IMG/VR virus record: IMGVR_UViG_3300027770_000027 | Coordinates: 62,001 to 126,000 of that record | Reading direction: 5' to 3' (one strand) | Length of the DNA: 64,000 nucleotides | Shown here: positions 1 through 31,925 of the stretch, piece by piece | How the letters are laid out: the number at the start of each line of letters is the position of its first letter | How positions within the stretch are numbered: the stretch's first letter is position 1 | Program-made: the position numbers and the translations under genes | Notes under the pieces: generated by a model | Databases searched by the model: none | Told to the model about the DNA's origin: nothing | The model's input: the letters and a program-made list of their open reading frames with translations, nothing else

Positions 1-60
1 TGTTCATCTTGTTTTTCATCATGTAATAATATTAACGGACGTTGGGGGGAACTGCAAGGA

Positions 61-333
61 CTACTTCCGAGCTCTGGCCTTCTTGAACTGAGCCCTCACC
101 TTTGCAAAGGTCTCGTCCTGCTCGGGCTCCGGGTAGAACCAGTTCCAGGTGTTGCGGACTCCCTTGACCAGGAGCTCGAGGAGGCACAGAGGGATGAGGA
201 TCGGGGAGAGCACCACGGTGAGCAGAGCGGTGACAACGATCGTGGTGATACAGGCGCTCGCTAGTGCGTTGATCGTGGACTGGTGGCGGAGGCGGAAAGC
301 GAAGGCTTCGGTGGGTGTCATGGTGTCTTTCAT
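61..333 (-). CDS. hypothetical membrane protein
   Basis: 90-aa ORF with a hydrophobic stretch, directly behind a TTCCCC promoter. Confidence 0.8.
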   Translation of the reverse strand: MKDTMTPTEAFAFRLRHQSTINALASACITTIVVTALLTVVLSPILIPLCLLELLVKGVRNTWNWFYPEPEQDETFAKVRAQFKKARARK

Positions 334-375
334 CTTGTATATATCTTAGGTGAGGAGAGGGGGAACCGCACGGAC

Positions 376-468
376 TTAGTTGAGGTCGAAGAGGTAGATA
401 AAGGTCGCGCCGAGGCCTACGAGAAGGACGAAGTGAACTGTCACGGCTACTACTTGGAACGTTGTCAT
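376..468 (-). CDS. 30-aa single-TM microprotein (MTTFQVVAVTVHFVLLVGLGATFIYLFDLN)
   Basis: Not in the ORF track. Starts 7 nt after the -10 box of a TTCCCC promoter and its stop abuts the next promoter. Confidence 0.75.
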   Translation of the reverse strand: MTTFQVVAVTVHFVLLVGLGATFIYLFDLN

Positions 469-500
469 TGTTAAGATATTAAAGGATGTACTGGGGAACC

Positions 501-695
501 TCAAGCGAAGACTTCGTGGGCGATCCCGGACTCTGGCTGCTCGTAGGACTCGATGAAGAACCTCTTAGAGTCCTTCCGTTGCCAGATCCACTCCTCCGCG
601 GACTTCCGATCGAAGAAGACTCCGATGAACTCATTGCCGCCGTTGGAGAAGGCTCCGGCTTCCTTGAACACGATATGGACTTGGGTCTTGGTCAT
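501..695 (-). CDS. small hypothetical protein, paralog of 734-898 and of the C-terminus of 16880-17218
   Basis: V(H/Y)IV...FIGVF...A pattern; own TTCCCC promoter. Confidence 0.8.
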   Translation of the reverse strand: MTKTQVHIVFKEAGAFSNGGNEFIGVFFDRKSAEEWIWQRKDSKRFFIESYEQPESGIAHEVFA

Positions 696-733
696 AGTTC
701 TATTATGGGTTAGGAACTGGGGAAGCTCAACGC

Positions 734-898
734 TTATCGTCCGAGAGCAGGCAGGGGCTTCTGAACAGTCACCCAGTGGAGGATCTCGGTCGGGACTCGG
801 AACACCTTAGCTGCCTGCTCTGCGTCCTCGCGCTTGGCGTAAGCTCCGAGGAAAGCCTGATTGTCTTCGCGAACGAGAATGTAAACGGTGTCTTTCAT
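734..898 (-). CDS. small hypothetical protein (start revised to MKDTVY)
   Basis: TTCCCC-N11-TAAGAT module places the start at 898. Confidence 0.75.
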   Translation of the reverse strand: MKDTVYILVREDNQAFLGAYAKREDAEQAAKVFRVPTEILHWVTVQKPLPALGR

Positions 899-930
899 TG
901 TTAATATCTTAGTGGATCTAACGGGGAAGC

Positions 931-1128
931 TCAAGCCTCAAGAGCGAGGACGTTGAACGGGACCTGGACTACCTGATTGCTGGGAAGTTCCACGCAGACA
1001 TCCAGCTCGGTGTTCTTCTCCAGGCGAGCGGCCACGGACATGGCCTGCCAGAGAGTCTCGTGGGATGTGTGGATCCGGTAGGGCTTGTTGGGGTAGAGAG
1101 GGGAGCGAGTGAGGACGTTGTAGGTCAT
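931..1128 (-). CDS. hypothetical protein
   Basis: 65-aa ORF in a tightly packed run. Confidence 0.7.
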   Translation of the reverse strand: MTYNVLTRSPLYPNKPYRIHTSHETLWQAMSVAARLEKNTELDVCVELPSNQVVQVPFNVLALEA

Positions 1129-1140
1129 GGTGATTGGGAA

Positions 1141-1242
1141 TTAGAGGTTATGCTTAGCTGCTACGTAGGTCACGAAGACTGCGGCGACTCCGGTGAGAGC
1201 GACTCCGGTGAACATCAGGATGGGAAGGACTGTTTCAATCAT
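1141..1242 (-). CDS. 33-aa single-TM microprotein (MIETVLPILMFTGVALTGVAAVFVTYVAAKHNL)
   Basis: Not in the track; leaderless ATG 6 nt after TAAGAT. Confidence 0.75.
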   Translation of the reverse strand: MIETVLPILMFTGVALTGVAAVFVTYVAAKHNL

Positions 1243-1281
1243 GTAATAATCTTAGCACATGACTGGGGGAACCTCCCGCCC

Positions 1282-1530
1282 TCAATAGTGCCGTGTCTTT
1301 GACTCTGTCTTGACTCGCTCATACTCTGCTCGCGTCCTCTCGTCTTCCAAAGAGAGGAGTAGCCGGTGGAGTTGGCCTGCAGCAACCTGATAGGCCTTCT
1401 CGGCGGTGTAGGCTTCCCGGCGAAGGGCATTGACGGCATCCAGCTTATCTGTCTTGTGAGCAGAGAGACTGTCCAGGAGGTCGAGTTGTTGGCGGACGCC
1501 GGGGTTATTGAGGATGTCTTGGTTATTCAT
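1282..1530 (-). CDS. hypothetical coiled-coil protein
   Basis: 82-aa helical ORF. Confidence 0.7.
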   Translation of the reverse strand: MNNQDILNNPGVRQQLDLLDSLSAHKTDKLDAVNALRREAYTAEKAYQVAAGQLHRLLLSLEDERTRAEYERVKTESKTRHY

Positions 1531-1554
1531 AGATTTATTGGTTGTGGGGAAAGA

Positions 1555-1731
1555 TTAGTGGCGGTTCCGGGGATTGATTCCCTTCCCGGCGTTCTCCTGC
1601 CGGTGGATGATGACCCCGGCGATCACGAAGAGGACAATCACAGGCCAGAAGTTCACGGCGAGCTTGAGGAAGACCTGGCCAATGAGGGAAAGCTTGTCTG
1701 TGAGGGTCATGTCGAAGTGTTCTTGAATCAT
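1555..1731 (-). CDS. 58-aa membrane protein (MIQEHFDMTLTDKL...)
   Basis: Not in the track; TTCCCA-N11-CATAAT-N6-ATG; one TM segment. Confidence 0.75.
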   Translation of the reverse strand: MIQEHFDMTLTDKLSLIGQVFLKLAVNFWPVIVLFVIAGVIIHRQENAGKGINPRNRH

Positions 1732-1788
1732 GTTTCTATTATGGCTGGGAATGCTGGGAAGGGAACGGCTGACTTTAACATTGAGGTC

Positions 1789-1971
1789 CTACTTGCACAG
1801 GCAGTAGACTCCGAAGAGGGCCAGCCCTCCCACGATGAGGCCGTGGTTCCCCAGGAACGCGAGACATAGGGTTCCCAGGGCGGTTCCGGCCATCGCCATT
1901 CCTAGGAAGGCGGACGGGCATAGGAACCAGAGGGCTGCGAGAACGGCGAGGAACATCATTACTTTCATCAT
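1789..1971 (-). CDS. 60-aa hydrophobic membrane protein
   Basis: Almost entirely hydrophobic; MMK leaderless start. Confidence 0.8.
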   Translation of the reverse strand: MMKVMMFLAVLAALWFLCPSAFLGMAMAGTALGTLCLAFLGNHGLIVGGLALFGVYCLCK

Positions 1972-2032
1972 GTATATATCTTACAGGACTTGAGGGGGAA
2001 GGGAACGCCGGAACGGGAAGGAAGGGAAGCGG

Positions 2033-2057
2033 GGGAGCCCCCACACAGGAGCTCCCC
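2033..2057 (-). terminator. GC-rich hairpin after 2072-2719 (weak U-tract)
   Basis: GGGAGCTCC...GGGGCTCCC stem on the minus strand. Confidence 0.4.
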
Positions 2058-2071
2058 TATGATGAAAGTGA

Positions 2072-2719
2072 TTAGGCTTTGCGCCGGGGGCCTTTGGTTC
2101 CCTTCCGGGTATCCTCAGGCTTGCGCTTCATGTCCTTGGAGTTGCAGAGACAGAACTCAGACAGAGGACATTGGGAACAACCAGCGTCTAGGAAGATATC
2201 GGGGCGCTGGCAGACCCCACGCGTGAGTTCTTCCACGGCTTCTCTAGACTTGAAATCAATCTTAACACCCTTGGCATCAGGATTAAACTTTGGGAGCTCA
2301 GCACGGACCTTGTCTTTACGGTCCTCCATATCTTCTCGAGTAAGGTAGTCCTCCTTAACATTACTACCCACCGTGATATTATCCTCTTTGGCTTTACGGA
2401 CCTTCGGAACTTTAACTTGTTTCGCAGGAGTACTAGCCTTACGACAATCTCCACATACGAACTTAGTAAGAAGTAATTCAATGGTGTTATACTCCGGCTT
2501 AGCCAACTGGCGTTTCAGGTTATCCCCGAACATGGAGGTCTGCTTATTCTTACAGCAAGAGCAATTGATCTTCTGTACCGGGAGGCGATCATTCTCCTTA
2601 TAGAAGGCAACCCACTCCTTAAGGTTCTTGAACTGATCGCCTCCCGAGGCCTGCTTGATGGCCACCTTAGCGGCTTTGGCTGCTGCACCGAACTTCTTAC
2701 GATATACTTTCTTCATCAT
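2072..2719 (-). CDS. Lys-rich protein with several Cys clusters (putative Zn-binding nucleic-acid-binding early protein)
   Basis: CSCC, CGDC and CQRP...CSQC...CLC motifs; basic termini. Confidence 0.8.
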   Translation of the reverse strand: MMKKVYRKKFGAAAKAAKVAIKQASGGDQFKNLKEWVAFYKENDRLPVQKINCSCCKNKQTSMFGDNLKRQLAKPEYNTIELLLTKFVCGDCRKASTPAKQVKVPKVRKAKEDNITVGSNVKEDYLTREDMEDRKDKVRAELPKFNPDAKGVKIDFKSREAVEELTRGVCQRPDIFLDAGCSQCPLSEFCLCNSKDMKRKPEDTRKGTKGPRRKA

Positions 2720-2757
2720 GTAATAATCTTAGCTGAAGTTGTGGGGAAGGGACCGAC

Positions 2758-2991
2758 TTACTTGCCGCAGTAGGCTTCGTCGTACACCGCGTTCATCTCC
2801 TGAGCCGCTTCGAGGCCTTCGCTATATCCTTTGTCTCGGCCAGCTTCAAAGGTCTTCTTCACCAGGGTGACCAGGGAACCGATGTACACGTCCCGGAAGT
2901 CCAGGCGATCCATATTACGGACCGCAATCGTTTCGATCTCGGTGTCGATGTGCTTCTGCAGGAGGGAAAGGATTTCGTCGTTCTTCATCAT
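2758..2991 (-). CDS. DUF6900-like small protein
   Basis: IETIAVRNMDRLDFRDV...FEAG matches the recalled family pattern TLETRNSDxLDFHDV. Confidence 0.65.
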   Translation of the reverse strand: MMKNDEILSLLQKHIDTEIETIAVRNMDRLDFRDVYIGSLVTLVKKTFEAGRDKGYSEGLEAAQEMNAVYDEAYCGK

Positions 2992-3029
2992 GTAATAATC
3001 TTAGCTGAAGTTGTGGGGAAGCTCCCGGC

Positions 3030-3212
3030 TTATCGGCCGAGGTTGTTTAGCTTGCGAATGGCGGCGTGAACTGCCCTAAGCTGGTTTACCAGGGGGTCTC
3101 CCAGACCGACGAGGCCTCCGTCTAGGACGATCTCGTCGATCTGCTTGTTGATGTCCCTGGACCGGTCCTTAAGTGCCGCCAGGGTCTTTGCTCTCTTCAT
3201 CTTGCTCATCAT
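3030..3212 (-). CDS. hypothetical protein (start revised to MMSKMK)
   Basis: TTCCCC-N11-TATGAT-N6-ATGATG. Confidence 0.75.
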   Translation of the reverse strand: MMSKMKRAKTLAALKDRSRDINKQIDEIVLDGGLVGLGDPLVNQLRAVHAAIRKLNNLGR

Positions 3213-3265
3213 GTAATAATCATAGAGCAGAATATGGGGAAGCGCAAGCGCGAATTTGCGTCTCC

Positions 3266-3478
3266 TCAATCAAGGGGGTATAGTTTCTCCTCCTGATCTT
3301 GGTGGGTCATATAAGCCACCGCGTCTGGGGAGAGTTGCGCATGGAGGAGGTCCTGCTCTAATTGCCACCCCATGTGAGGGCATATTCGGCGGGGCATGCC
3401 CTCCTGAGGTGGCGGACGTTCCTGGGCGACCTTCCGACCCATCGGGCCCCATTGCGCTGCGGGTGTATCATCTGACAT
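3266..3478 (-). CDS. hypothetical protein (start MSDDTP)
   Basis: TTCCCG...TATAAT-N6-ATG promoter at 3479-3510. Confidence 0.55.
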   Translation of the reverse strand: MSDDTPAAQWGPMGRKVAQERPPPQEGMPRRICPHMGWQLEQDLLHAQLSPDAVAYMTHQDQEEKLYPLD

Positions 3479-3588
3479 GCTATCATTATAGCGCAGGGTC
3501 ACCGGGAAGGCAATCGGAGCTTCGGGTTCCCCATGATTTTATAATTTGGTAGTTGCAAAAATTTTTTTTGTGATTAGACTTCCCCTAA

Positions 3589-3634
3589 CCGAAATACTGG
3601 CCGAAATCGAGACCGACAATCATCAGGCCGAAAT
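3589..3634. repeat. short direct repeats CCGAAAT (3589, 3601, 3628; variant CCGACAA at 3613)
   Basis: Read directly, in non-coding DNA at the GC boundary. Confidence 0.6.
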
Positions 3635-3673
3635 ACAAACCTGATCTCCTCTTACCATTACTGTTCTATAGAT

Positions 3674-3751
3674 CTACCAGATACCTAACAACAAACTAAT
3701 AACGGCCAAGCCTATTAGAAGTACTTGCAAGGTATCTGATAGATGATTCAT
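3674..3751 (-). CDS. 25-aa TM microprotein (MNHLSDTLQVLLIGLAVISLLLGIW)
   Basis: ATGA overlap with the upstream micro-ORF; hydrophobic. Confidence 0.6.
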   Translation of the reverse strand: MNHLSDTLQVLLIGLAVISLLLGIW

Positions 3752-3825
3752 TCTTGTTTATGAGAACAATGATAACCTAAAACCCAGACGGCTATAAAAC
3801 CTAAGAGTCCTAAGAACTCCATCAT
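3748..3825 (-). CDS. 25-aa TM microprotein (MMEFLGLLGFIAVWVLGYHCSHKQE)
   Basis: ATGA overlaps on both sides. Confidence 0.6.
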   Translation of the reverse strand: MMEFLGLLGFIAVWVLGYHCSHKQE

Positions 3826-3905
3826 ACAATAAACAGGAAGATGAATAGATATGCCAAGATGGATATACTAAGGGCAATCTTAATAAAGTAGTGGTTATCT
3901 TTCAT
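3822..3905 (-). CDS. 27-aa TM microprotein (MKDNHYFIKIALSISILAYLFIFLFIV)
   Basis: Downstream of TTGAGT...TGnTATAAT at 3941-3968. Confidence 0.6.
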   Translation of the reverse strand: MKDNHYFIKIALSISILAYLFIFLFIV

Positions 3906-3976
3906 GGTCTAATATTTTAAGCTGTATTAACTTATACGGTATTATAACATACCTCTCTATTAACTCAAGATCTTTC

Positions 3977-4600
3977 TTAGGCTTTAATGGCTCTTCCTTC
4001 TTTGTCTACTAGATATCCATAGAAGTCCACCTCAGGATACTCATCTCCTAATTGTTTGAATGCTTCTATATTCTTTTCCGCGTCGTCATATAATCTAGCC
4101 ACATCAAACTCTTTACTATCTAGATACCTTCTAATGATAACCGCTTTCTTCTCTGCTATATTCAGATTAGGAATCTGTAGATTACCAGCGCGTTCCACAT
4201 ATACCATATCAATGTTGATCCCATGCTTTCTAAAGGTATCTAGGAATACTTCTTTGTTATCGAAATCCGAACGGGCTGTAATAATGATTACTCTACTCTT
4301 AGGATTCCTATGGACATTACCTAGAATACCAATCATCTTATTCACCATAGAAGGAATGGGAACACTCTCCTGATTAAACTTCTTAGCATCCTTGAACTCC
4401 TGGAAGTCTGGTTTTTCTCCCGGTTGCCACTCATAGGTATTGAACTCACTATTGCTAATAGGCTTGGTCTTTCCTTCCGAGTCTGTCACTCCCACCTTAG
4501 CCGTAGTATGGAACAAAGTATCATCTATATCAAACACCGTAAGAGACCCTAGATTATGTCTATGGGTCGTCTCCGTATAATAGTCTTGAAAGCTTTGCAT
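3977..4600 (-). CDS. HAD-superfamily phosphatase (polynucleotide 3'-phosphatase-like); start revised to MQSFQDYYTE
   Basis: FDIDDT (motif I), ITAR (II), K, YDD (IV). Confidence 0.85.
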   Translation of the reverse strand: MQSFQDYYTETTHRHNLGSLTVFDIDDTLFHTTAKVGVTDSEGKTKPISNSEFNTYEWQPGEKPDFQEFKDAKKFNQESVPIPSMVNKMIGILGNVHRNPKSRVIIITARSDFDNKEVFLDTFRKHGINIDMVYVERAGNLQIPNLNIAEKKAVIIRRYLDSKEFDVARLYDDAEKNIEAFKQLGDEYPEVDFYGYLVDKEGRAIKA

Positions 4601-4601
4601 A

Positions 4602-4814
4602 CTATTCACCGGAGATGGTCTCCTTAATATGTTTCTGTACCGCATCAAACAATTCAGTAACCAACCCGCTGATGTTTTCTTCTATCCTATAAGCCTTAAG
4701 GATGGATCTAAAAGTATCTTTCAAGGTAGCATCTTCCTTAGCATCTGGATTAGCTTCTTCCTTTAAGAGTTGTTCATAGATAGATTCTAATTGTAATTGT
4801 TCGCGGTCTTCCAT
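4602..4814 (-). CDS. small late protein with N-terminal targeting-like peptide (MEDREQLQLESIYEQLLKE)
   Basis: ATAAATA box immediately upstream. Confidence 0.75.
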   Translation of the reverse strand: MEDREQLQLESIYEQLLKEEANPDAKEDATLKDTFRSILKAYRIEENISGLVTELFDAVQKHIKETISGE

Positions 4815-4926
4815 AATCTTTATTTATCAATTCATTTATTTTAAAGTACGAGATAACTTCGTTAATAGCGCGGTATTAAAGGGTATTTTATTAGTTTCTT
4901 CTAGAAAAACCTAAAATAGAATTCCC

Positions 4927-4994
4927 TTTTTCTCACTTTTTGAGCCCTTTTTTGCGATTTTTGTCCCCTTTTTCTCAATTTTTGAAAGGTTTTT
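4927..4994. other. phased T5-6 tracts (intrinsically curved DNA)
   Basis: Tracts start at 4927, 4937, 4948, 4958, 4969, 4979 and 4990, a 10.5-bp period. Confidence 0.9.
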
Positions 4995-5011
4995 GCTATT
5001 AAAGTTAGTGT

Positions 5012-5197
5012 TTAATCCTGTTTATGCAGCAAAAAATGGTAGATATTCTTTATTTGATTTTCGAGATCTTTGACCTTTTCCTCTAGATCTTTAATCCTAT
5101 TCCTAGAGTCTTCAATCAATGCATCCCTAGAATCTTTTATTTCATGCCCATACATTTTAGCGGTAAGAGTGGGTCCTGGATAATCGTAGTCATTCAT
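5012..5197 (-). CDS. hypothetical coiled-coil protein
   Basis: ORF track; packed operon. Confidence 0.7.
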   Translation of the reverse strand: MNDYDYPGPTLTAKMYGHEIKDSRDALIEDSRNRIKDLEEKVKDLENQIKNIYHFLLHKQD

Positions 5198-5198
5198 A

Positions 5199-5561
5199 TT
5201 AATAAGAAGGTTTTCTAAAGGTTTCCTTGCCGTTTAGATAATACACTAGCTCTTCGTCTTTTTCCAGATACTTTATGGTAAAACGATAAGGTTTATTAGG
5301 CTTAAATGTAATCCCATCTACCTGATGCCTCGGCATACTATTAGTACAGACCTCGCCATCGTACTGATGCAATAGCTTCTCATCATCTTCAATGTCTGAA
5401 AGATATAGATCATTTCCGCAAGAGAACTCCATATCAAAGGCTTGTTCAATATGTTCTACTGAACCACAGGCCTTATACAATTCATTGTAGTCAGACTCTT
5501 GATCTTCAGTCAAAGGAAACATTAAATATACATCAAATACTGTGTTACTCATATCTTTCAT
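5199..5561 (-). CDS. hypothetical acidic protein
   Basis: ORF track; packed operon. Confidence 0.75.
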   Translation of the reverse strand: MKDMSNTVFDVYLMFPLTEDQESDYNELYKACGSVEHIEQAFDMEFSCGNDLYLSDIEDDEKLLHQYDGEVCTNSMPRHQVDGITFKPNKPYRFTIKYLEKDEELVYYLNGKETFRKPSY

Positions 5562-5572
5562 ATTTACTCATA

Positions 5573-5758
5573 TTAGACAAGTTTCACTGCCAGTTGAGTG
5601 TCGTAAGGGCCTTCCTTCTTACCATTATAGACAATGTACTCGTTCTGGTAGGCTTCTTGGATTTCATAAGTGCCTTCTTCATTTGTGGCAACAACAATAA
5701 GGTCTCCGTGCTTAGCTTTAAGTGCTTCCAGCTTTTCAATTAGTTCTGAGATCTTCAT
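5573..5758 (-). CDS. hypothetical protein (MKISELIEKLE..HGDL.V type)
   Basis: N-terminus typical of small phage proteins. Confidence 0.75.
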   Translation of the reverse strand: MKISELIEKLEALKAKHGDLIVVATNEEGTYEIQEAYQNEYIVYNGKKEGPYDTQLAVKLV

Positions 5759-5788
5759 ATTAGTATACTTCCTTTGATGTGTTTCGTA

Positions 5789-6016
5789 CTAGTCAACAAG
5801 ATCCACTTGAATGCTAATCCCGTTGAATGTGGCTCCGATTCCTTTGTATTGGAATCGATCATCTGCAATACACTTCAAGGCTTCTTCCACTGCTCCAGCC
5901 GTACGAAGATCAACCGTATCATGTAGTTTACTATACGTACAATTCACCATCATACGACCATCTACACCCCAGGTCCGAACGATCCGCAGCTTCTGTTTCG
6001 ATTTGATCTTCATCAT
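5789..6016 (-). CDS. hypothetical protein (start revised to MMKIK)
   Basis: TTCCCC promoter with leaderless ATGATG. Confidence 0.75.
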   Translation of the reverse strand: MMKIKSKQKLRIVRTWGVDGRMMVNCTYSKLHDTVDLRTAGAVEEALKCIADDRFQYKGIGATFNGISIQVDLVD

Positions 6017-6035
6017 GTATATATTATGTAGGAGG

Positions 6036-6257
6036 TTAGGGGGAAGGTCCACCTGGTTGTCGGCTTTCTAAGACCTCATGGGTTGCAACCTGGCGAATCA
6101 ATTCAATATGCCTATCTGGGTAATCATAACAAGTAAACTTGTAAGAGTTACGAGCAGGCTGCTCATCTTTGAATTCACCCCAACACCAGAACTCTCCATT
6201 GTTATCTCTATAGCCCACTAGATAGGTATATTGATTATCACCGGTTCTCATATCCAT
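6036..6257 (-). CDS. small paralogous-family protein
   Basis: YxxLVGYRD..W...F.DE..A...I.LIR pattern. Confidence 0.7.
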   Translation of the reverse strand: MDMRTGDNQYTYLVGYRDNNGEFWCWGEFKDEQPARNSYKFTCYDYPDRHIELIRQVATHEVLESRQPGGPSP

Positions 6258-6679
6258 TCAGACTTAATAGTTACTTCTCTTTTGACGATTCGATATGTAT
6301 CACAATAAGGTCTACCAGAGTATTCGGCAATGTAATCATAGGCCTCTTTCAAGGTGTCTAGATTATACCTACGAACATTCCATTCATCTTTCTTTTCCCA
6401 GTCTTGAACTTCAATGTCATAAGAGATTCTAGTAGTGGTTTCCGCTGGCTTAGTATTGTTCTTACGAAAACAAAAAGACCTTTTATGTTCAATCACCTGA
6501 GCATCTAGGATCAAAGGGTCTTTGAAAAGTTCTTTAATGGCTATAGAAACATCATCTACATTATGATACTCTGAGGTCCTGTCGTAATCATCAGTTTGAG
6601 TATAGACCTCTACAGCATCTCGCTTTTTATTAGTCTTAGTGACCTCAATGGTATATACAGTTTTATTTAGGTATGCCAT
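6248..6679 (-). CDS. small paralogous-family protein, apparently two tandem domains
   Basis: YTIEV... and YDIEV...W...EA...YRIVKREV. Confidence 0.75.
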   Translation of the reverse strand: MAYLNKTVYTIEVTKTNKKRDAVEVYTQTDDYDRTSEYHNVDDVSIAIKELFKDPLILDAQVIEHKRSFCFRKNNTKPAETTTRISYDIEVQDWEKKDEWNVRRYNLDTLKEAYDYIAEYSGRPYCDTYRIVKREVTIKSEWI

Positions 6680-6685
6680 ATTAAT

Positions 6686-6886
6686 TTAATCCTTTGCTCT
6701 CGCACCATATATGGTATCATATCCACTATCATATCCAATCTGATAACCAGCTTCGAATCCTTCATTCAAAGCTTCCTTAGCAATCTGCCTGAATAGCTCT
6801 CGATGGTGCTCATAAGACATAGCTTTGTGTTTAGTCTCTAGTACTTTGTTAATGATCTTGTCAATGGCTTCGTATTCTTCTTCCAT
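6686..6886 (-). CDS. hypothetical protein
   Basis: GFEAGYQIGYDSGY repeats. Confidence 0.7.
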   Translation of the reverse strand: MEEEYEAIDKIINKVLETKHKAMSYEHHRELFRQIAKEALNEGFEAGYQIGYDSGYDTIYGARAKD

Positions 6887-6887
6887 A

Positions 6888-7106
6888 TTAGTAAGGGTAA
6901 CTTGATTCTACTCCATCTTGACGCCAAAAGCTAGCTAATTCATCAAAGAAGTCTTGTTCTTTGTAACTGGTATCCCAATAGAATTCAGCACCATAAGGAC
7001 TTTTGCCTTTAATGATCCACTTTTCTAATGAAGTGTAGTATTGTACCTCAAAAGTATAAGCTGCGGCAACATGCAATAAGGTTTGGGAAGGAGGATTGGA
7101 GGTCAT
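6888..7106 (-). CDS. hypothetical protein
   Basis: ORF track. Confidence 0.65.
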   Translation of the reverse strand: MTSNPPSQTLLHVAAAYTFEVQYYTSLEKWIIKGKSPYGAEFYWDTSYKEQDFFDELASFWRQDGVESSYPY

Positions 7107-7150
7107 AATAGAATAAACAGAGAGGAAAGACCTGTATTAACACACTTGTA

Positions 7151-7477
7151 TTAGTGGTTCAATTCCAAGCTATCAACAACGTCTTGGATGGTTTCATAAT
7201 CTTCTTCGGAGATCTCATTCTTAAAATGGGTCTTAGCGATCTCTACCCAATTAACCGCATTGAGATAATCTCCAACAGCTTGATACGCCAAAGACCCCTG
7301 TTTAAGGTCTGCGAACTCCAACTCTTCCACTAGCTGCTCAAAGGCATCTGCCATATGCTCTACATCATCGAACTCCTGGTCTTCTGCCATTGACGCGAAG
7401 ATCTCCTCATACATGAGGTTGATGTTCCAGGTCTGCTTGTTCGTCCAGCCGTTGTATGTCGTATCGTTTCTCATCAT
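7151..7477 (-). CDS. conserved phage hypothetical protein (YNGWTN..TW motif)
   Basis: Motif common in phage and mobile-element proteins; TTCCCC promoter. Confidence 0.8.
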   Translation of the reverse strand: MMRNDTTYNGWTNKQTWNINLMYEEIFASMAEDQEFDDVEHMADAFEQLVEELEFADLKQGSLAYQAVGDYLNAVNWVEIAKTHFKNEISEEDYETIQDVVDSLELNH

Positions 7478-7515
7478 GTAAATATCTTATAGGAAGAAAG
7501 GGGGAACCACACGCC

Positions 7516-7926
7516 TTACAGACTGCCGACATGCAGGACCTTGTCATCCTGGGAAAATTCAAAGCCGTGGCTGTAGTAACCGTTATGTACATTCCATAGA
7601 TGAAGGAATTGTTCCTGATCTCCCTTAATCATACGAAAGACTGCCCGGTTGTCATCATCGTAGTAATCATCAATGCTAGTCGAAAGCTTTTCAAAGAACG
7701 CAGGATCAAAGGTCCAACCTTCGAGTAGTTGATTAACATCTTTACCATCCTGGATGGTGTCATTAAACAAATGATCGTGAAGGTCGGTAGTAACCTTGTC
7801 ACTAACATACCAACCAAAGCTCTCACAGCAGCTAGCTGAGAAATCATATCCGACAAGAACATTGTTCTCGTCTACGAAGTTAATCTTAGAACCCCAGCTA
7901 TCAGGATCTGCATGGAAATAACGCAT
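7516..7926 (-). CDS. conserved phage hypothetical protein (CCE...HNGYYSH motif)
   Basis: Motif recognition. Confidence 0.8.
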   Translation of the reverse strand: MRYFHADPDSWGSKINFVDENNVLVGYDFSASCCESFGWYVSDKVTTDLHDHLFNDTIQDGKDVNQLLEGWTFDPAFFEKLSTSIDDYYDDDNRAVFRMIKGDQEQFLHLWNVHNGYYSHGFEFSQDDKVLHVGSL

Positions 7927-7974
7927 AGTTGTATTGTATAGAGGTCGTGTGGTTGTATTGTTTAGAGGTAAGAC

Positions 7975-8340
7975 TTACCGCTCCATGGAAGACATGAAAC
8001 GATCTTCGAAATCATTCATGTAGAGGAACTCTGGGTCATTCACCGGAGCATCAAAGGTTGGTTCAAACTTCCCGGCACTTTCAGGAAACTTAGCTTCTCC
8101 TGCCACTTTCCCGTTAATCAAGATACGGACACAACGAAGCTCGTTCGGGTGGCAGACATATTGCCGGGAGTTATTAACAACCCAATCCATCTCCCGCTTG
8201 AGGTCTTGCAGAGCACTGGCTCGGGTCATTCCCACGACCGAATAGATCGTATTCCAATGAATTACTCCAGTATCAGTGAAGACCTGGATCTGAAGGCGAC
8301 CGACGACTGTTTCTTCTGCGAATGATTGTGTTTCCATCAT
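7975..8340 (-). CDS. hypothetical protein
   Basis: Leaderless MM start behind a TTCCCC promoter. Confidence 0.8.
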   Translation of the reverse strand: MMETQSFAEETVVGRLQIQVFTDTGVIHWNTIYSVVGMTRASALQDLKREMDWVVNNSRQYVCHPNELRCVRILINGKVAGEAKFPESAGKFEPTFDAPVNDPEFLYMNDFEDRFMSSMER

Positions 8341-8382
8341 GTATATATCTTAGACGAGGTTGTGGGGAACCGCAAGGACTAC

Positions 8383-8601
8383 TTAAAGGACCACCTGCTC
8401 TGGCTCACTGGCCTGACACACTAGCTCGAGCACCTCCTCCATGTAGGAGACTCCTGCGGCGAAGTTCGCGCGGCCACGGTTGTCGGAGACGTACTGGAGG
8501 ATCACCTGGACTGCTTCAGCCACTGAGACGTGGTTGGCCTTGAGGATCTCTGCGGCGGCGGACTTGGCTGCTTCGGACTGGATGTATTCGTTCTTCATCA
8601 T
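8383..8601 (-). CDS. hypothetical protein
   Basis: MMKN start, own promoter, GC-rich codons. Confidence 0.8.
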   Translation of the reverse strand: MMKNEYIQSEAAKSAAAEILKANHVSVAEAVQVILQYVSDNRGRANFAAGVSYMEEVLELVCQASEPEQVVL

Positions 8602-8643
8602 GTTTATATCTTAGAGGAGGTAATGGGGAAACTCAACGCTTAC

Positions 8644-8904
8644 TTAGATGCCCTGGGCAAGTACGGCGTCCTCTGGGCTCTGCCAGTAGGTCTTCGAGAA
8701 GGTCACTATCCAGGTGTCTCTGTTCACTCGAAGGGCTTTGAACACCAGAGCATTGTCCTCATTGTCCAGCACCGTGATGGCATCCACTGAAGAGGGATGG
8801 AAGACGCGGACCTTGTTGACGATGTACTGGACGCGCTTGGCTTCCTTGGCGAGGACGTTGACTTGCTTCGTGCTGAGGACTCGTGTGTATGTGTTCTTCA
8901 TCAT
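8644..8904 (-). CDS. hypothetical protein
   Basis: MMKN start, own promoter. Confidence 0.8.
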   Translation of the reverse strand: MMKNTYTRVLSTKQVNVLAKEAKRVQYIVNKVRVFHPSSVDAITVLDNEDNALVFKALRVNRDTWIVTFSKTYWQSPEDAVLAQGI

Positions 8905-8913
8905 GTATATATC

Positions 8914-9135
8914 TTAGACGAGGTTGTGGGGAAACGCAAGGGCTTCTGCCTTCTCAAGTGCTTCTTCTCCATCCATTCCCAGCTTCTCGATCTGCTCGAT
9001 CGTGGCGTTGGCTGCTTCACAAGCGGACCTGCGGAGCTTTGCGGCTTCATCCCCCCAAACACCGTCCAGGTCGAAAGCCTGTTGGAGTTGCAAGGTGAGC
9101 TGCTCAAGGAGAATGTCGATCGTGTTTTTCATCAT
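8914..9135 (-). CDS. hypothetical protein
   Basis: MMKN start; C-terminus runs through the next promoter. Confidence 0.8.
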   Translation of the reverse strand: MMKNTIDILLEQLTLQLQQAFDLDGVWGDEAAKLRRSACEAANATIEQIEKLGMDGEEALEKAEALAFPHNLV

Positions 9136-9144
9136 GTAATAATC

Positions 9145-9345
9145 TTAGTCGATCTTAGGGGGAACCGCACGAGCATTGTGCTGCTGGGTCTCATAGCTCC
9201 ACATGACTTGTTCCCAATACTTGATTTCTAATTCCAGGTGTCTAGGAATTAAACATAAGTCTATCTTTCTTCTAGGAAGTTGATCATCTAATTCATTCAA
9301 TCGAGCAATGGCTTGTTCGTAATGTTCTCGAGATATAGGAATCAT
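9145..9345 (-). CDS. hypothetical protein
   Basis: ATGA overlap with the upstream gene. Confidence 0.7.
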   Translation of the reverse strand: MIPISREHYEQAIARLNELDDQLPRRKIDLCLIPRHLELEIKYWEQVMWSYETQQHNARAVPPKID

Positions 9346-9716
9346 TTGCTTTGTAACAATGCTACTCTTTCAGGAACTTCTAGTAACCAGGTTAATCTAA
9401 ACTCACCACCAAATCGATCGGAGATGTAATTTAAGCTACCTTCAATTGAATCAATGGATTCGTAACCATAGGTCTCATCTCCTGTTCGACGATCTGGTTC
9501 GTATGGTGTTATGCTTTTGTATTTTTTGCAGGTTCTTATGTTTCTTTGTTCAAGATAAGACCGATACTTGATAATAACATTCTGATGTTTAATGATTCGT
9601 TCACAGATCTTTTCTAGGTTCCAGTGATAATAAAAGTCTTCAAAGACCTGGTTAGCAATAACTGATCGCCAGGTTTTGGCTTTCTTCTCTAGTCGCTTAA
9701 AGGTCTTGTTCTTCAT
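9342..9716 (-). CDS. hypothetical protein
   Basis: ORF track. Confidence 0.7.
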   Translation of the reverse strand: MKNKTFKRLEKKAKTWRSVIANQVFEDFYYHWNLEKICERIIKHQNVIIKYRSYLEQRNIRTCKKYKSITPYEPDRRTGDETYGYESIDSIEGSLNYISDRFGGEFRLTWLLEVPERVALLQSK

Positions 9717-9717
9717 A

Positions 9718-9981
9718 TTACTTCTCTACAATAGTAACGATGCCTTCTAATACACCGTAAGTAGACTTCTCAGTATACTTGTAAGTGTCTGGTTGTTCTC
9801 CTTCTTTACGTACTCGTGTTAGAATCCAAAGGTCTGTTTGTTTCCAGGAGCAATTGATAAGCTTCTGATCCTTTTCAAGTTCTACGGTCATATTACCACC
9901 AACTGCTCGAGTAAAATAGTTACAGGAAGAAAGAGAAAGAATGGAAACAAGGCCGATTACTTTAAGAATGTTATTGATCAT
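9718..9981 (-). CDS. putative lipoprotein
   Basis: Signal peptide with LSSC lipobox; GG.MTV.L...WK..LW.LTR pattern. Confidence 0.75.
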   Translation of the reverse strand: MINNILKVIGLVSILSLSSCNYFTRAVGGNMTVELEKDQKLINCSWKQTDLWILTRVRKEGEQPDTYKYTEKSTYGVLEGIVTIVEK

Positions 9982-10023
9982 ACGTTAATAATACATGCTG
10001 TGATGGGGAAGAGCAACGTGGTA

Positions 10024-10272
10024 TTAACGAGAAACTCGACTGGTCAATGCTGTCTCATACTTGAGAGCATTACGAACTTCTTCAGGAGTTCCCCCGGTTG
10101 TTGCCAGGGTAACCAAATGGCGTAGAGCTGAGGTAAGAACCCCAGTTGCATAGGGGTAATTGATTGCACCATCTCCTTTACGGCGAGCAGCGTCTTCTAC
10201 TTCATTCAGGTAGTTGCGAAGCAGTTCGTTGATCTCTGAGACGCTGACGGTGTTCTTCTTTCTTTTCATCAT
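10024..10272 (-). CDS. hypothetical protein
   Basis: MMK start, TTCCCC promoter. Confidence 0.8.
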   Translation of the reverse strand: MMKRKKNTVSVSEINELLRNYLNEVEDAARRKGDGAINYPYATGVLTSALRHLVTLATTGGTPEEVRNALKYETALTSRVSR

Positions 10273-10303
10273 GTAATAATCTTACATGATGATGGGGGGA
10301 ACG

Positions 10304-10849
10304 TCACTGTTGAACGCCGTAGAGACTCGCGAGCAAGGACTCGGCTTTATTCAAAGCACCTGGAATACTTGTCTTGTCTACTTTCAATTCTTTAGATGGC
10401 ATAATACCAAATGAATCATAAGCTCTGATGAGTATATGACTTGAGTTATGTATTAAAGTAACTGTGTTGGTAATGTCAGTTAATTGAGCAGTACGACCCT
10501 TGTTTGGATGTTCTGGATCTAATACCTTATGAGTGCTAAGAAAGATACGAGTCCAATCATAACCTTGTTTGCTTAAATCTTTAATCACTTGCGGGGCTTC
10601 CATCAATAGATCTTGAAGGTTTCCATTCTTTAGGTCTTTACTAATAGACTTCTCTCTAGACCAATCTTCTTCACCAAAAACCAAACCATGTATAGAACCA
10701 AAGAACTCTGCTCTAGTAGATAGGTATTGAAACATCTTTGCCAGGACTTCAGGGTCTCTATTAACCTTTGCCTTATTAACGCTCAAAGCATTGGACTCTA
10801 GGACCTTTGCGTAGGCCTGTTCTAATAAAATGGAGTCTTTGGTTCTCAT
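10304..10849 (-). CDS. putative internal virion protein with MRTKDSILLEQAY leader
   Basis: Shared N-terminal peptide; late operon. Confidence 0.8.
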   Translation of the reverse strand: MRTKDSILLEQAYAKVLESNALSVNKAKVNRDPEVLAKMFQYLSTRAEFFGSIHGLVFGEEDWSREKSISKDLKNGNLQDLLMEAPQVIKDLSKQGYDWTRIFLSTHKVLDPEHPNKGRTAQLTDITNTVTLIHNSSHILIRAYDSFGIMPSKELKVDKTSIPGALNKAESLLASLYGVQQ

Positions 10850-10853
10850 ATGA

Positions 10854-11408
10854 TTAACGTTTCATTCCACCGATTCTAAAGCTTTGTCCAGCTTTTGCAT
10901 GAACTTCTGCAGGGGAGTCTTCCAGGAAACGAACACTAACTGTGGTGCCTTGATTTACATTATAGTCCTGACCTTTAATGGTTAAAATTAAATTACCGTT
11001 CTTTGTGTAATCTTGATCTCCGGAAGATCTCTTAACATCCTGAATAACGCCTTGAGCAAATACTCCATCCTCTAATTCAAACTTTGTATGAGCAACACTA
11101 CCACCAGATCCAGGCACTGTAGCACTACCATCATCACGACCATAACCAGAGGTTTGTTTATGACCAGTGACTCTAGACAAAGACACTTCTTTACCAACCA
11201 GGGTCTTTAGTTTAGCAAAGGCATTATCCTTTTCAAAAGATGGGAGCATATTGAATCTAGGAATAAGATTATTAGCTTCGTCTTCAGATATAGGAGCTTG
11301 TTGATCCTTGAAATGCATTGCATCAATCTCTTTAGCTCTCCTGGAACTAATCCCTTCTTGGACAGTTTCATAGGCTTGCTCAAGTAAAATAGTGTCTTTA
11401 GTTCTCAT
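10854..11408 (-). CDS. putative internal virion protein with MRTKDTILLEQAY leader (start revised)
   Basis: ATAAATA 9 nt upstream of the ATG at 11408. Confidence 0.8.
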   Translation of the reverse strand: MRTKDTILLEQAYETVQEGISSRRAKEIDAMHFKDQQAPISEDEANNLIPRFNMLPSFEKDNAFAKLKTLVGKEVSLSRVTGHKQTSGYGRDDGSATVPGSGGSVAHTKFELEDGVFAQGVIQDVKRSSGDQDYTKNGNLILTIKGQDYNVNQGTTVSVRFLEDSPAEVHAKAGQSFRIGGMKR

Positions 11409-11419
11409 TGTTATATTAT

Positions 11420-11770
11420 TTATTCTCCTTGTTCGTCTTCTTCTGTAGGATGAGACATATAATCCCACTTATCCCAGCTACTCATTTCAGGTTCTTCTTC
11501 TTCATCTTGATCATTGCTTTGATCCTTAGCTTTAATGAGAGCGGCTAGTTGAACTGCTAACTTGGCAATCTCTGGGTCCATTACTCTTTGATGCCCGTAT
11601 TGACCCCAATGAGCTAGTTCATCCAATACAGCTTCCATACTATGAGGAAGAGTCCCACTTGGTTTATTTGGATTTGCTAGGATATCTTTAGCCTCTTTCT
11701 CTGGATTGAATTCCATGACAAGCTTATAAGCTTCATGTATATTGGTTAATTCTTTACTCGGGAGTCTCAT
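11420..11770 (-). CDS. putative internal virion protein (MRLPSKELTNIHEAYKLVME)
   Basis: ATAAATA upstream; variant leader; acidic tail. Confidence 0.75.
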   Translation of the reverse strand: MRLPSKELTNIHEAYKLVMEFNPEKEAKDILANPNKPSGTLPHSMEAVLDELAHWGQYGHQRVMDPEIAKLAVQLAALIKAKDQSNDQDEEEEPEMSSWDKWDYMSHPTEEDEQGE

Positions 11771-11832
11771 TTGTTTTTATTATTTATCCTCAAAGAGCAT
11801 CATAAACACAAACCAAAATAAGATTAAAGCAA

Positions 11833-12063
11833 TCATTTGTTGGCGTTGCATTTGTAATGTTCGTACAAAGCTTCTTCGATTTCTCTACGTTCTTTTCTAT
11901 TAAATTGACTAGTGACATCATCACATTCCCAGTTTTGAATCCTTACTGAATGTGGACAACCTTGTTGATCTAGATATTCAAATACGAATAGTCTGTAGTC
12001 ATCATATACAATTTCTGTGACTCGTTCAATGATAGCTCGAAGGGTTGATTTAACAATTTTCAT
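11833..12063 (-). CDS. hypothetical protein
   Basis: ORF track. Confidence 0.65.
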   Translation of the reverse strand: MKIVKSTLRAIIERVTEIVYDDYRLFVFEYLDQQGCPHSVRIQNWECDDVTSQFNRKERREIEEALYEHYKCNANK

Positions 12064-29574: not shown

Positions 29575-29706
29575 TTAAAGGTTCTCTACTTTAAATTTAC
29601 TCTTGCGTTGATATGTCTTGCGGTTCATGTAAACCACCTTGATCTGTCGATTACCAAACTGGGCTGTCTTTGCATATACCTTGTCTCCAACTTTGAGTGT
29701 TTTCAT
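29575..29706 (-). CDS. 43-aa basic microprotein
   Basis: Promoter nearly identical to that at 2991-3025; not in the track. Confidence 0.65.
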   Translation of the reverse strand: MKTLKVGDKVYAKTAQFGNRQIKVVYMNRKTYQRKSKFKVENL

Positions 29707-29746
29707 CTTGTAATAATCTTAGCTGAGGTTGTGGGGAAGCTCCCGA

Positions 29747-29995
29747 CTATAAAGAGAATCTCTTTTGAAACGCCTGCATCAACAAATCATACATTGTCTC
29801 TCGGAATATTGAGAACTGCCAGGGCTCCTTGAGATACTGTGTTTCTGTAATCCATAGTTTAAGATTATGAGAGTCTCTAATAAACTGGACATAACTTTCA
29901 CCCTGGAAATTAAAACTCTCTGCAGTATTAAACAATGTTGTCAGACGATCCAGGACATCATTAAGCTCTTCACTGATAACATCATATCTATCCAT
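29747..29995 (-). CDS. hypothetical protein
   Basis: Own TTCCCC promoter. Confidence 0.75.
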   Translation of the reverse strand: MDRYDVISEELNDVLDRLTTLFNTAESFNFQGESYVQFIRDSHNLKLWITETQYLKEPWQFSIFRETMYDLLMQAFQKRFSL

Positions 29996-31798: not shown

Positions 31799-31822
31799 AT
31801 GATATACTTACCCTAAAAGGGG

Positions 31823-31903: not shown

Positions 31904-31925
31904 TTTTATGTATTTATCCAGAAAA

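What the first reader, a model, noticed from the sequence alone, without database searches (positions are those of the whole stretch)
4862..4994. Seven T-tracts phased at 10.5 bp beside an 18-bp palindrome
Seen: T5-6 tracts are spaced 10, 11, 10, 11, 10 and 11 bp apart in a gene-free gap, and the imperfect palindrome TTAATAGCGCGGTATTAA lies at 4862-4879. Known: helically phased A-tracts cause strong intrinsic bending, as at some packaging sites and origins. Inference: a structural cis-site such as a pac/terminase site, replication origin or injection pause signal.
Basis: partly seen in the sequence, partly recalled or inferred. Interest (0 to 1): 0.7.

Follow-up and report, generated by a model that had tools for sequence, protein, structure and literature searches.

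The report
Curved A-tract promoter cassette in phage
A 135-bp intergenic cassette in a 227-kb freshwater T4-like phage carries seven A-tracts spaced exactly one DNA turn apart, the most strongly curved DNA predicted in the genome. It most likely acts as an upstream activating (UP-element-like) region of a weak promoter, which is a known kind of element in an extreme form, not a packaging site or origin.

Summary
T5-6 tracts start at 4927, 4937, 4948, 4958, 4969, 4979 and 4990, in the 197-bp gap between two minus-strand ORFs. It is the only chain of more than three phased tracts in the 227-kb genome, and it has the top 10.5-bp TT periodicity (z=10.5) and the top predicted curvature.

The palindrome is there but ordinary. 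The genome has 57 equally good ones, and relatives change its spacer to 6, 11 or 16 nt.

Relatives are informative:
- A variant 85% identical keeps the tracts while the spacers diverge (p=0.013).
- A second lineage has eight tracts (11,10,11,10,11,11,10) at the syntenic place between non-homologous genes. Tract positions match at 31/36 and spacers at 10/32. The distance to a shared CTAGAAG is the same 37 nt.
- No variant has an indel inside the array.
- A variant about 96% identical lacks the whole gap, and other relatives lack the array.

Structure is therefore conserved, sequence is not, and the cassette is dispensable and sits at mosaic junctions.

On the coding strand the tracts fall at about -40, -50, -60 ... 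-90 of a weak core promoter (GTGAGA-17-TAGGTT; TTGGCT-17-GATAAT in the other lineage).

Best reading: a curved UP-type promoter cassette (about 0.5 confidence, no transcription start data). Origin, pac and injection-stop readings are poorly supported.

The parts
4927..4994 (-). Array of seven phased A5-6 tracts (T-tracts on the + strand), average period 10.5 bp. It is the curved core of the element.
   Evidence: It is unique in the 227-kb genome. Tract positions are conserved and spacers are not in relatives.
4924..4985 (-). Three tandem 21-bp units (CAAAAAnnGnnAAAAAGGGnn on the - strand), two tracts per unit.
   Evidence: TRF. There are no other copies in the genome. The GGG and spacer parts are not kept in variant B or in L266.
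4873..5008 (-). The cassette that is conserved as a block in relatives. Homology with variants starts and stops at these edges.
   Evidence: read laying (pieces 4873-5006/5008, 4867-5012, 4879-5006; 0 gaps). blastn (85% over 146 nt in L247/L248). Alignment A1.
4931..4936 (-). -35-like hexamer GTGAGA of the favoured core promoter P_a (4 of 6 matches to TTGACA).
   Evidence: Read from the sequence. It is in the same register as TTGGCT in L266. 4934 differs from all four variants.
4908..4913 (-). -10-like hexamer TAGGTT of P_a, 17 nt after the -35-like hexamer. T1, A2 and T6 are invariant and only positions 4-5 vary among variants.
   Evidence: TAGGAT, TAGGCT, TAGACT in variants. L266 has GATAAT in the same register.
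4898..4904 (-). CTAGAAG, shared by both cassette lineages at an identical 37-nt distance from the A-tract. The predicted transcription start (about 4901) lies inside it.
   Evidence: Alignment A2. It is not a recurrent intergenic motif in the genome. The start site is inferred, not observed.
4885..4890 (-). TAAAAT, the alternative -10 candidate (P_b). It is in helical phase with the array, and TGATAAAAT stands at this place in variant B.
   Evidence: Inference only.
4862..4879 (.). The arms TTAATA/TATTAA are kept in variants, but the spacer is 6, 11 or 16 nt.
   Evidence: 57 equally good palindromes in the genome. (10-nt insertion after 4866 in one variant). (hairpin -0.6, -9.2 and 0 kcal/mol in the three versions).
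4838..4865 (-). Sigma-70-like match TTAACG-16-TAAAAT. It lies outside the conserved cassette and is absent from variant B.
   Evidence: 9 of 12 matches, and the number of such sites in the region is no more than in shuffles..
4812..4826 (-). TAAATA-N6-ATG: a late-promoter-like motif directly before the start codon of the 70-aa ORF.
   Evidence: 45 TAAATA-N5-6-ATG occurrences in the genome, not tested against chance. Assigning it to T4-type late promoters rests on my own knowledge.
4602..4814 (-). 70-aa ORF downstream of the cassette, with no family match.
   Evidence: Homologues are 84% and 66% identical.
3977..4648 (-). HAD-type phosphatase-like ORF (DxDxT motif). It resembles the phosphatase part of polynucleotide kinase and is the second gene of the putative unit.
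   Evidence: phrog_415, E=7.8e-9. (Pfam below cut-off).
5012..5197 (-). 61-aa ORF whose stop codon abuts the cassette. No terminator lies between it and the array.
   Evidence: In variant B it is shortened by a 79-bp deletion.

Best explanation
The element is a strain-variable regulatory cassette (window 4873-5008, read on the minus strand). Its body is intrinsically curved DNA: seven A-tracts on one face of the helix. The array abuts and overlaps a weak core promoter, GTGAGA (-35) / 17 nt / TAGGTT (-10), with a predicted start near 4901 inside a conserved CTAGAAG.

Relative to that start the tracts lie at about -40/-36, -52/-47, -61/-57, -72/-68, -82/-78 and -93/-89. These are the positions of UP-element subsites and of upstream curved activating DNA.

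The inferred mechanism: the narrow minor grooves of the proximal tracts are contacted by the C-terminal domains of the RNA polymerase alpha subunits. The in-phase bend wraps upstream DNA back onto the polymerase. Together these compensate for the poor hexamers and give an extra promoter for the 70-aa ORF and the phosphatase-like gene.

What is shown:
- The array and its uniqueness in the genome.
- Conservation of tracts and register but not of spacer sequence.
- Presence or absence among close relatives.
- Location at mosaic junctions.

What is inferred: that it is a promoter, which hexamers are used, and the alpha-subunit/wrapping mechanism.
For: 1. Uniqueness and curvature.

2. Orientation. 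All neighbouring genes are on the minus strand, so the tracts are A-tracts directly upstream of the next gene.

3. Structure is conserved, sequence is not.
- Variant B (L247/L248): 34/36 tract positions are identical against 23/32 spacer positions, Fisher p=0.013.
- The L266 lineage has 8 tracts spaced 11,10,11,10,11,11,10. Tract positions match at 31/36 and spacers at 10/32, p=4e-6.
- Curvature is the locus maximum in L248 and L266, and within 0.2 degrees per turn of the maximum in L247.

4. The phase is protected. Four variants show no indel in 4873-5006, while the flanks carry insertions of 2 and 10 nt and deletions of 79, 105 and 199 nt.

5. The register to the core is conserved. It is exactly 37 nt from the A-tract to CTAGAAG in both lineages.

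6. In the L266 lineage the same register holds TTGGCT-17-GATAAT, a 9/12 sigma-70 match, directly after the last tract.

7. In close variants the only variable positions between 4873 and 4926 are 4909 and 4910. These are positions 4-5 of the -10-like hexamer. T1, A2 and T6 never change.

8. Conservation with variant B ends shortly after the predicted start, and the leader is diverged.

9. Helically phased A-tracts upstream of bacterial and phage promoters, with phase-dependent activity, are established (reviewed in PMC9825172).
Against: - No transcription start data. The only RNA run is held as contigs, and its contig simply runs through the gap. That fits read-through or DNA carry-over equally well.
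- The core hexamers in this phage are poor (7/12) and fell below the scan threshold. Calling them a promoter is post hoc, and a second candidate (TAAAAT 4890-4885) cannot be excluded.
- The phage's about 22 ordinary promoters (CTTCCCC...TAAGAT/TATAAT...ATG) are a different class and carry no such array. This one would therefore be a one-off.
- The host, and so its promoter grammar, is unknown.
- The alignment with L266 is anchored on the tracts themselves, so its p-value is partly circular.
Confidence: 0.5

Rival explanations
1. A recombination or architectural cassette. The curved segment serves as a junction for modular gene shuffling, in the way PeSL elements do in T4-type phages. Alternatively it pins a plectoneme apex or binds a nucleoid-associated or wrapping protein. 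A promoter role would be secondary or absent.
For: - The cassette sits at mosaic breakpoints. In the L266 lineage it is 97-100% identical, while identity drops to 58-82% exactly at the ATG of the downstream gene, and the upstream and downstream genes are swapped.
- Flanking genes differ between the two cassette lineages.
- It is present or absent among close relatives.
- PeSL precedent: PMC2839356, PMC4122927.
Against: - It is single-copy in the genome, so it cannot recombine with a partner in cis as PeSLs do.
- Recombination needs sequence identity, yet the sequence-specific parts are the least conserved.
- No binding protein is known.
- This idea does not explain the fixed register to the downstream core.
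Confidence: 0.17
2. A replication origin. Three 21-bp iteron-like repeats and a bend sit next to an AT-rich stretch (4815-4860) that could unwind. A promoter-primed R-loop, as at T4 oriF/oriG, is also possible.
For: - Three direct 21-bp repeats.
- A unique site in the genome.
- A gap GC of 0.29.
- Intrinsic bends and iterons are typical of origins such as lambda ori, and T4-type origins are dispensable and not conserved among relatives (both from my own knowledge).
Against: - The unit sequence is not conserved where the tracts are, so a sequence-specific initiator is unlikely.
- No initiator-like gene is nearby.
- Cumulative GC skew has no extremum at the site. The local change 1 kb away is the edge of a high-GC island.
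- It is absent from a relative about 96% identical and from the 188-kb relative.
- Several other gaps in the genome have a lower GC.
Confidence: 0.1
3. A functionless by-product: a tandem duplication of a 21-bp A-rich unit that happens to be in helical phase and is carried along neutrally.
For: - It is a 3x tandem repeat.
- The element is dispensable.
- No function has been demonstrated.
Against: - Substitutions avoid the tracts.
- There are no indels in the array despite indel-rich flanks.
- A second lineage has 8 tracts and unrelated spacers at the same place.
- The 10/11 alternation is kept in both lineages. None of this is expected under neutrality.
Confidence: 0.12
4. A packaging (pac) site, terminase recognition site or genome end.
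For: Some pac regions, such as SPP1 pacL, are intrinsically bent (from my own knowledge). The site is unique in the genome.
Against: - It is a T4-type phage. Such phages package by headful without a unique pac site (from my own knowledge).
- The large terminase gene is 59 kb away.
- The element is missing in close relatives.
- No read-end pile-up was reported, though only contigs were available.
Confidence: 0.02

Closest known systems
UP elements and upstream curved-DNA activating regions of bacterial and phage promoters (rrnB P1 UP element; T4 early promoters with A-rich -42/-52 regions; Bacillus phage SP82 Alu156/Bal129 promoters; cyanobacterial psbA upstream curved DNA)
   Same: - A-tracts lie on the non-template strand, phased at one helical turn, starting directly upstream of a -35-like hexamer.
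- Their phase relative to the core is conserved.
- The core hexamers are weak.
- Literature context: PMC9825172. The other examples named are from my own knowledge.
   Different: - Seven to eight near-perfect tracts reach to about -95, longer and more regular than the usual 2-4.
- It is a single instance in a 227-kb genome whose other promoters lack it.
- Promoter activity is not shown here.
PeSL (promoter-early stem-loop) mobile regulatory cassettes of T4-type phages (Arbiol et al. 2010, PMC2839356; Comeau et al. 2014, PMC4122927)
   Same: - It is a small intergenic regulatory cassette in a hyperplastic region of small ORFan genes of a T4-type phage.
[quoted passage not shown]
- It lies at insertion, deletion and replacement junctions between relatives.
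   Different: - PeSLs are many-copy repeats with a consensus sigma-70 promoter and a GC-rich terminator hairpin. This cassette is single-copy, has no terminator and has a poor core.
- The true PeSL analogue in this phage is the hairpin plus CTTCCCC...TAAGAT/TATAAT motif, about 22 copies.
Iteron-type origins with intrinsic bends (for example lambda ori)
   Same: Direct repeats of about two helical turns, A-tract-based bending, and an adjacent AT-rich DNA stretch.
   Different: The repeat sequence is not conserved, there is no initiator gene, and there is no skew signal. The element is dispensable.
Kinetoplast minicircle bent region (the classic phased A-tract bend)
   Same: The same physical principle: A5-6 tracts every 10-11 bp. 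Many unrelated metagenome contigs found with the motif search look like this.
   Different: The organism and context are unrelated. There is no homology, and it serves as a structural analogue only.

Membership tests
Upstream curved-DNA / UP-type promoter element | A/T-tracts phased at about one helical turn, giving an intrinsic bend | tested here: met
   Spacings are 10,11,10,11,10,11. The site is the genome maximum for periodicity (z=10.5) and for modelled curvature. Physical bending was not measured.
Upstream curved-DNA / UP-type promoter element | Lies directly upstream of the -35 of a promoter that points at the downstream gene | tested here: inconclusive
   GTGAGA-17-TAGGTT (7/12) is in this phage, and TTGGCT-17-GATAAT (9/12) is in the L266 lineage at the same register. 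It is below the scan threshold here. An alternative -10, TAAAAT, lies at 4890-4885.
Upstream curved-DNA / UP-type promoter element | Helical phase between the tracts and the core promoter matters and is kept | tested here: met
   The distance from tract to CTAGAAG is 37 nt in both lineages. Four variants show no indels in 4873-5006.
Upstream curved-DNA / UP-type promoter element | A transcript starts downstream, and activity falls when the tracts are removed or dephased | not testable with these tools
   The RNA run is available as contigs only. The host is unknown.
PeSL cassette (T4-type phages) | A repeated motif present many times in the hyperplastic regions of the same genome | tested here: not met
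   It is single-copy.
PeSL cassette (T4-type phages) | A consensus sigma-70 promoter joined to a stable GC-rich stem-loop terminator | tested here: not met
   There is no terminator-like hairpin in the gap. The RNA fold gives z=-0.69. The hexamers are poor.
PeSL cassette (T4-type phages) | Marks insertion, deletion and replacement junctions between related phages | tested here: met
Iteron-type replication origin | Three or more direct repeats of about 17-22 bp | tested here: met
   3 x 21 bp.
Iteron-type replication origin | The repeat sequence is conserved as a specific binding site for an initiator encoded nearby | tested here: not met
   Spacers match at 23/32 (variant B) and 10/32 (L266). 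The neighbouring ORFs have no family match.
Iteron-type replication origin | A strand-composition switch or a replication-dependent depth peak at the site | tested here: inconclusive
   There is no skew extremum at the site. In T4-type phages skew follows transcription. Depth from contigs is uninformative.
pac / terminase recognition site | Located in or beside the terminase genes, in a phage with site-specific packaging initiation | tested here: not met
   TerL is at genome position 7.3-7.9 kb and the array at 66.9 kb. It is a T4-type phage.
pac / terminase recognition site | Read ends pile up at the site | not testable with these tools
   Only assembled contigs of the runs were available, and no pile-up was listed.

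The most novel reading that the evidence does not exclude
The array is not merely a promoter accessory. It would be a self-contained, structure-defined mobile cassette: a piece of permanently bent DNA that selection keeps in shape but not in sequence. It would move between gene contexts in the hyperplastic regions of freshwater T4-like phages. There it would act as an architectural site, for example a plectoneme apex, a wrapping site for a polymerase, topoisomerase or nucleoid protein, or an R-loop origin. Its recognition would be by shape alone.
Probability: 0.15. Interest if true: 0.6.

Novelty: new member of a known kind. Interest (0 to 1): 0.35.

Why it matters
If the reading is right, this is an unusually clean natural example of selection acting on DNA shape rather than sequence. 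Seven or eight A-tracts are held in exact helical register across lineages whose spacers have diverged to near randomness.

It would add a second class of regulatory cassette, distinct from PeSL-type terminator-promoter repeats, to the toolkit that shuffles small genes in T4-type phages. It would also provide a compact, portable, strongly curved promoter-upstream module for testing how far upstream wrapping contributes to initiation.

It does not identify a packaging site or an origin for this uncultured phage. It should not be used as one when orienting the genome.

Tried and rejected
- Megablast of the region against GenBank phages: no match.
- Rfam on window 1-12000: nothing.
- RNA folding of the gap: no structure beyond shuffles, so an RNA-level element was dropped.
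- IMG/VR relatives of the phosphatase-like gene (13 loci, 40-49% identical): no synteny and no array.
- Relatives of the two flanking small ORFs in IMG/VR: none.
- Exact-pattern scans of IMG/VR for the 21-bp unit, for the array-to-CTAGAAG register and for a two-lineage consensus: no hits.
- The same unit pattern in metagenomes gave 109 stretches. One was the source contig itself (L116, 100% identical). The rest were unrelated, many with multiple CAAAAAGGGTC-type arrays.
- A generic scan of IMG/VR for five A5 tracts returned mostly poly-A-like stretches, contig ends and giant-virus contigs, with no consistent context.
- Palindrome as an operator: rejected. It has no second copy, 57 equally good palindromes exist in the genome, the spacer length varies and there is no stable hairpin.
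- CTAGAAG as a recurrent promoter box: rejected.
- The 8-bp direct repeat TATTAAAG at both cassette edges (4874-4881, 4997-5004): about 1.3 such repeats are expected by chance in a gap of this size, so it is not used.
- Host inference: no psbA and PhoH present, so the host stays unknown.
- Pfam and PHROG searches on genes flanking both cassette lineages: uninformative.

Full report
**Context**

The window is bases 62,001-126,000 of a 227,352-bp virus record from a freshwater metagenome. CheckV rates it complete, and it has no terminal repeats.
- It is a T4-type myovirus. It has a gp23-family major capsid gene, a Terminase_6N large terminase at genome position 7.3-7.9 kb, RNA ligases 1 and 2, tail-fibre genes and 11 tRNA genes.
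- Its capsid protein is at most 35% identical to any GenBank phage. The best matches are cyanomyoviruses.
- It has no psbA, and PhoH is present. The host is unknown.
- The finding lies in a run of small minus-strand ORFan genes. This is the kind of hyperplastic region described for T4-type phages.

**The observation**

- The seven T-tracts start at 4927, 4937, 4948, 4958, 4969, 4979 and 4990.
- TRF reads them as three 21-bp units.
- The gap 4815-5011 has no ORF above 26 aa.
- It is the only chain of more than three phased tracts in the genome, and 50 shuffles never exceeded five.
- A parameter-free measure, the 10.5-bp Fourier amplitude of TT in 84-bp windows, puts it first in the genome at z=10.5, with the runner-up at 6.7.
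- A wedge-model curvature profile also puts it first.
- The 18-bp palindrome exists. It is one of 57 equally good ones in the genome, has no second copy and does not fold.

**Orientation**

Every neighbouring gene is on the minus strand. Read that way, the gap follows the stop of a 61-aa ORF with no terminator between them. It precedes a 70-aa ORF and a HAD-type, polynucleotide-kinase-phosphatase-like gene. The tracts are then A-tracts on the coding strand.

**Relatives**

IMG/VR holds no syntenic relative. Public runs and assemblies do.

Laying contigs of other freshwater runs on the region gave the following:
- One variant about 96% identical has the whole gap (4816-5014) replaced by 24 unrelated letters.
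- Four variants keep 4873-5006 without a single indel.
- Their flanks carry insertions of 2 and 10 nt and deletions of 79 and 105 nt.

Protein look-ups then gave real sequences:
- L250, from another sample, is identical.
- L247/L248 (variant B) is 85% identical over the cassette. It keeps 34 of 36 tract positions but only 23 of 32 spacer positions (p=0.013). Its homology ends shortly after TTTAATAC, at about 4873, and the leader and downstream gene are diverged.
- A second lineage (L266/L267, L274-L282) shares only the next gene upstream, a 116-aa homologue that is 75% identical. It has eight A-tracts spaced 11,10,11,10,11,11,10 in the equivalent gap. The adjacent small genes are not homologous.
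- Aligned to our array, that second array matches at 31/36 tract positions and 10/32 spacer positions. This test is partly circular, because the tracts anchor the alignment.
- The distance from the aligned tract to a shared CTAGAAG is exactly 37 nt in both lineages.
- Modelled curvature is the locus maximum in L248 and L266, and within 0.2 degrees per turn of the maximum in L247.
- Within the second lineage the cassette is 97-100% identical. Identity falls to 58-82% exactly at the ATG of the downstream gene, and neighbouring genes are swapped.
- Other relatives of the 120-aa gene (L253-L265, L268-L273) lack any such array, as does a 188-kb relative.

The element is therefore conserved in shape and register, not in sequence. 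It is dispensable and patchy, and it sits at mosaic junctions.

**Mechanism**

In the second lineage the scan finds TTGGCT-17-GATAAT directly after the last tract. The same register in this phage reads GTGAGA (4936-4931), 17 nt, TAGGTT (4913-4908).
- This is a poor core at 7/12.
- T1, A2 and T6 of the -10-like hexamer are invariant in all variants.
- The only variable positions between 4873 and 4926 among close variants are its positions 4 and 5: TAGGAT, TAGGCT, TAGACT.
- With a start near 4901, inside CTAGAAG, the tracts fall at -40/-36, -52/-47, -61/-57, -72/-68, -82/-78 and -93/-89. These are UP-element and upstream-curvature positions.
- Helically phased A-tracts upstream of bacterial and phage promoters, with phase-dependent effects, are well documented (PMC9825172 and the references it cites).

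I therefore read the cassette as an intrinsically curved UP-type activating region fused to a weak core promoter. It would add a transcription start for the 70-aa and phosphatase-like genes. A second -10 candidate, TAAAAT at 4890-4885, is in phase with the array and cannot be excluded.

All of this is inference. The only RNA run is stored as contigs, and its contig runs straight through the gap.

**What it is not**

- The phage's ordinary promoters form a different, repeated class of about 22 copies: CTTCCCC, then 11-13 nt, then TAAGAT or TATAAT, then 6-8 nt, then ATG. Several follow a terminator hairpin. These are the analogue of PeSL cassettes (PMC2839356, PMC4122927). The curved cassette is single-copy and lacks a terminator, so it is not a PeSL, although it shares the junction behaviour.
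- Against an origin: the unit sequence is not conserved, there is no initiator gene and no skew extremum, and the element is dispensable. I keep it at about 0.1 because T4-type origins are redundant and variable.
- Against a pac site: this is a T4-type headful phage, the terminase gene is 59 kb away, and close relatives lack the element.
- An injection-stop signal has no basis in this phage type.
- Neutral repeat drift is contradicted by the substitution and indel pattern.

**Verdict**

The element is a new, extreme member of a known kind: curved upstream promoter DNA. It also shows a clear signature of selection on shape.

The promoter reading gets about 0.5 confidence. Interest is moderate. 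The element is unusual in degree, but the principle is textbook and the function is untested.

Noticed in passing
window 1-3600 (genome 60,400-65,600; L015:6400-11600): A 5.2-kb island of 52-57% GC lies in a phage of about 36% GC. It is packed with small minus-strand ORFs without family matches, yet it carries the phage's own CTTCCCC...TAAGAT...ATG promoter motif. In variant B (L247) the GC-rich stretch begins about 200 nt after the gene downstream of the curved cassette.
   Followed up: partly
about 22 sites, e.g. window 929, 2001, 2749, 3021, 3242, 3509, 6046, 10011, 26578, 27892, 29353, 29739, 30025, 31167, 33857, 34886, 43577 (minus strand): A repeated promoter-like motif: (TTG)nnCTTCCCC, 11-13 nt, TAAGAT/TATAAT, 6-8 nt, ATG (often ATGATG). 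Several copies follow a terminator hairpin. The start codon sits so close to the -10 that the mRNAs would be leaderless or nearly so, and no Shine-Dalgarno sequence is visible. It is the PeSL analogue of this phage.
   Followed up: partly
genome-wide; e.g. window 4812-4826: TAAATA stands 5-6 nt before the ATG at 45 places in the genome. It resembles the T4 late-promoter core at a fixed distance from start codons, again implying very short leaders. The count was not tested against chance.
   Followed up: no
window 2709-2760, 2981-3032 and 29702-29748: Copies of a roughly 50-bp repeat, 92-94% identical (blastn). They coincide with three of the CTTCCCC promoter motifs.
   Followed up: no
window 5064-5104, inside the 61-aa ORF: A 21-bp tandem repeat (1.9 copies). 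Variant B has a 79-bp deletion (5009-5087) ending in this repeat, which shortens the ORF. The deletion probably arose by slippage between the copies.
   Followed up: partly
window 31821-34506: A cluster of 11 tRNA genes on the minus strand: Leu x2, Ile-tat, Met x2, Gln, Pro, Thr, Ala, Lys, Asn.
   Followed up: no
window 37962-39074, 42510-43547, 3977-4648: RNA ligase 1-like, RNA ligase 2-like and a polynucleotide-kinase-phosphatase-like gene together suggest a T4-style tRNA repair set. In the second cassette lineage a Zeta_toxin/AAA_33 kinase-like gene lies downstream of the cassette (L274:5031-5219).
   Followed up: no
L024, L057/L058, L083, L091, L097, L088 (metagenome contigs): Short metagenome contigs carry several separate arrays of phased CAAAAAGGGTC-type tracts, up to 19 tracts in L088. 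They are unrelated to this phage and are reminiscent of kinetoplast-minicircle bent regions. Their origin was not determined.
   Followed up: no
L067:3756-3800 (contig Ga0208643_1000206, 39.9 kb, 38% GC): An unrelated contig has a five-tract array in a minus-strand intergenic gap directly before a start codon. It ends in the same 16-mer (CAAAAAGTGAGAAAAA) as unit 3 here. No protein similarity to this phage was found, so whether this is chance or a shared cassette is unresolved.
   Followed up: partly
window 3727-3820: The metatranscriptome contig ends at 3727, about 80 nt beyond a predicted terminator (3820-3804, minus strand) downstream of the phosphatase-like gene. No RNA contig covers 3375-3726. 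This is consistent with the end of a transcription unit there.
   Followed up: no
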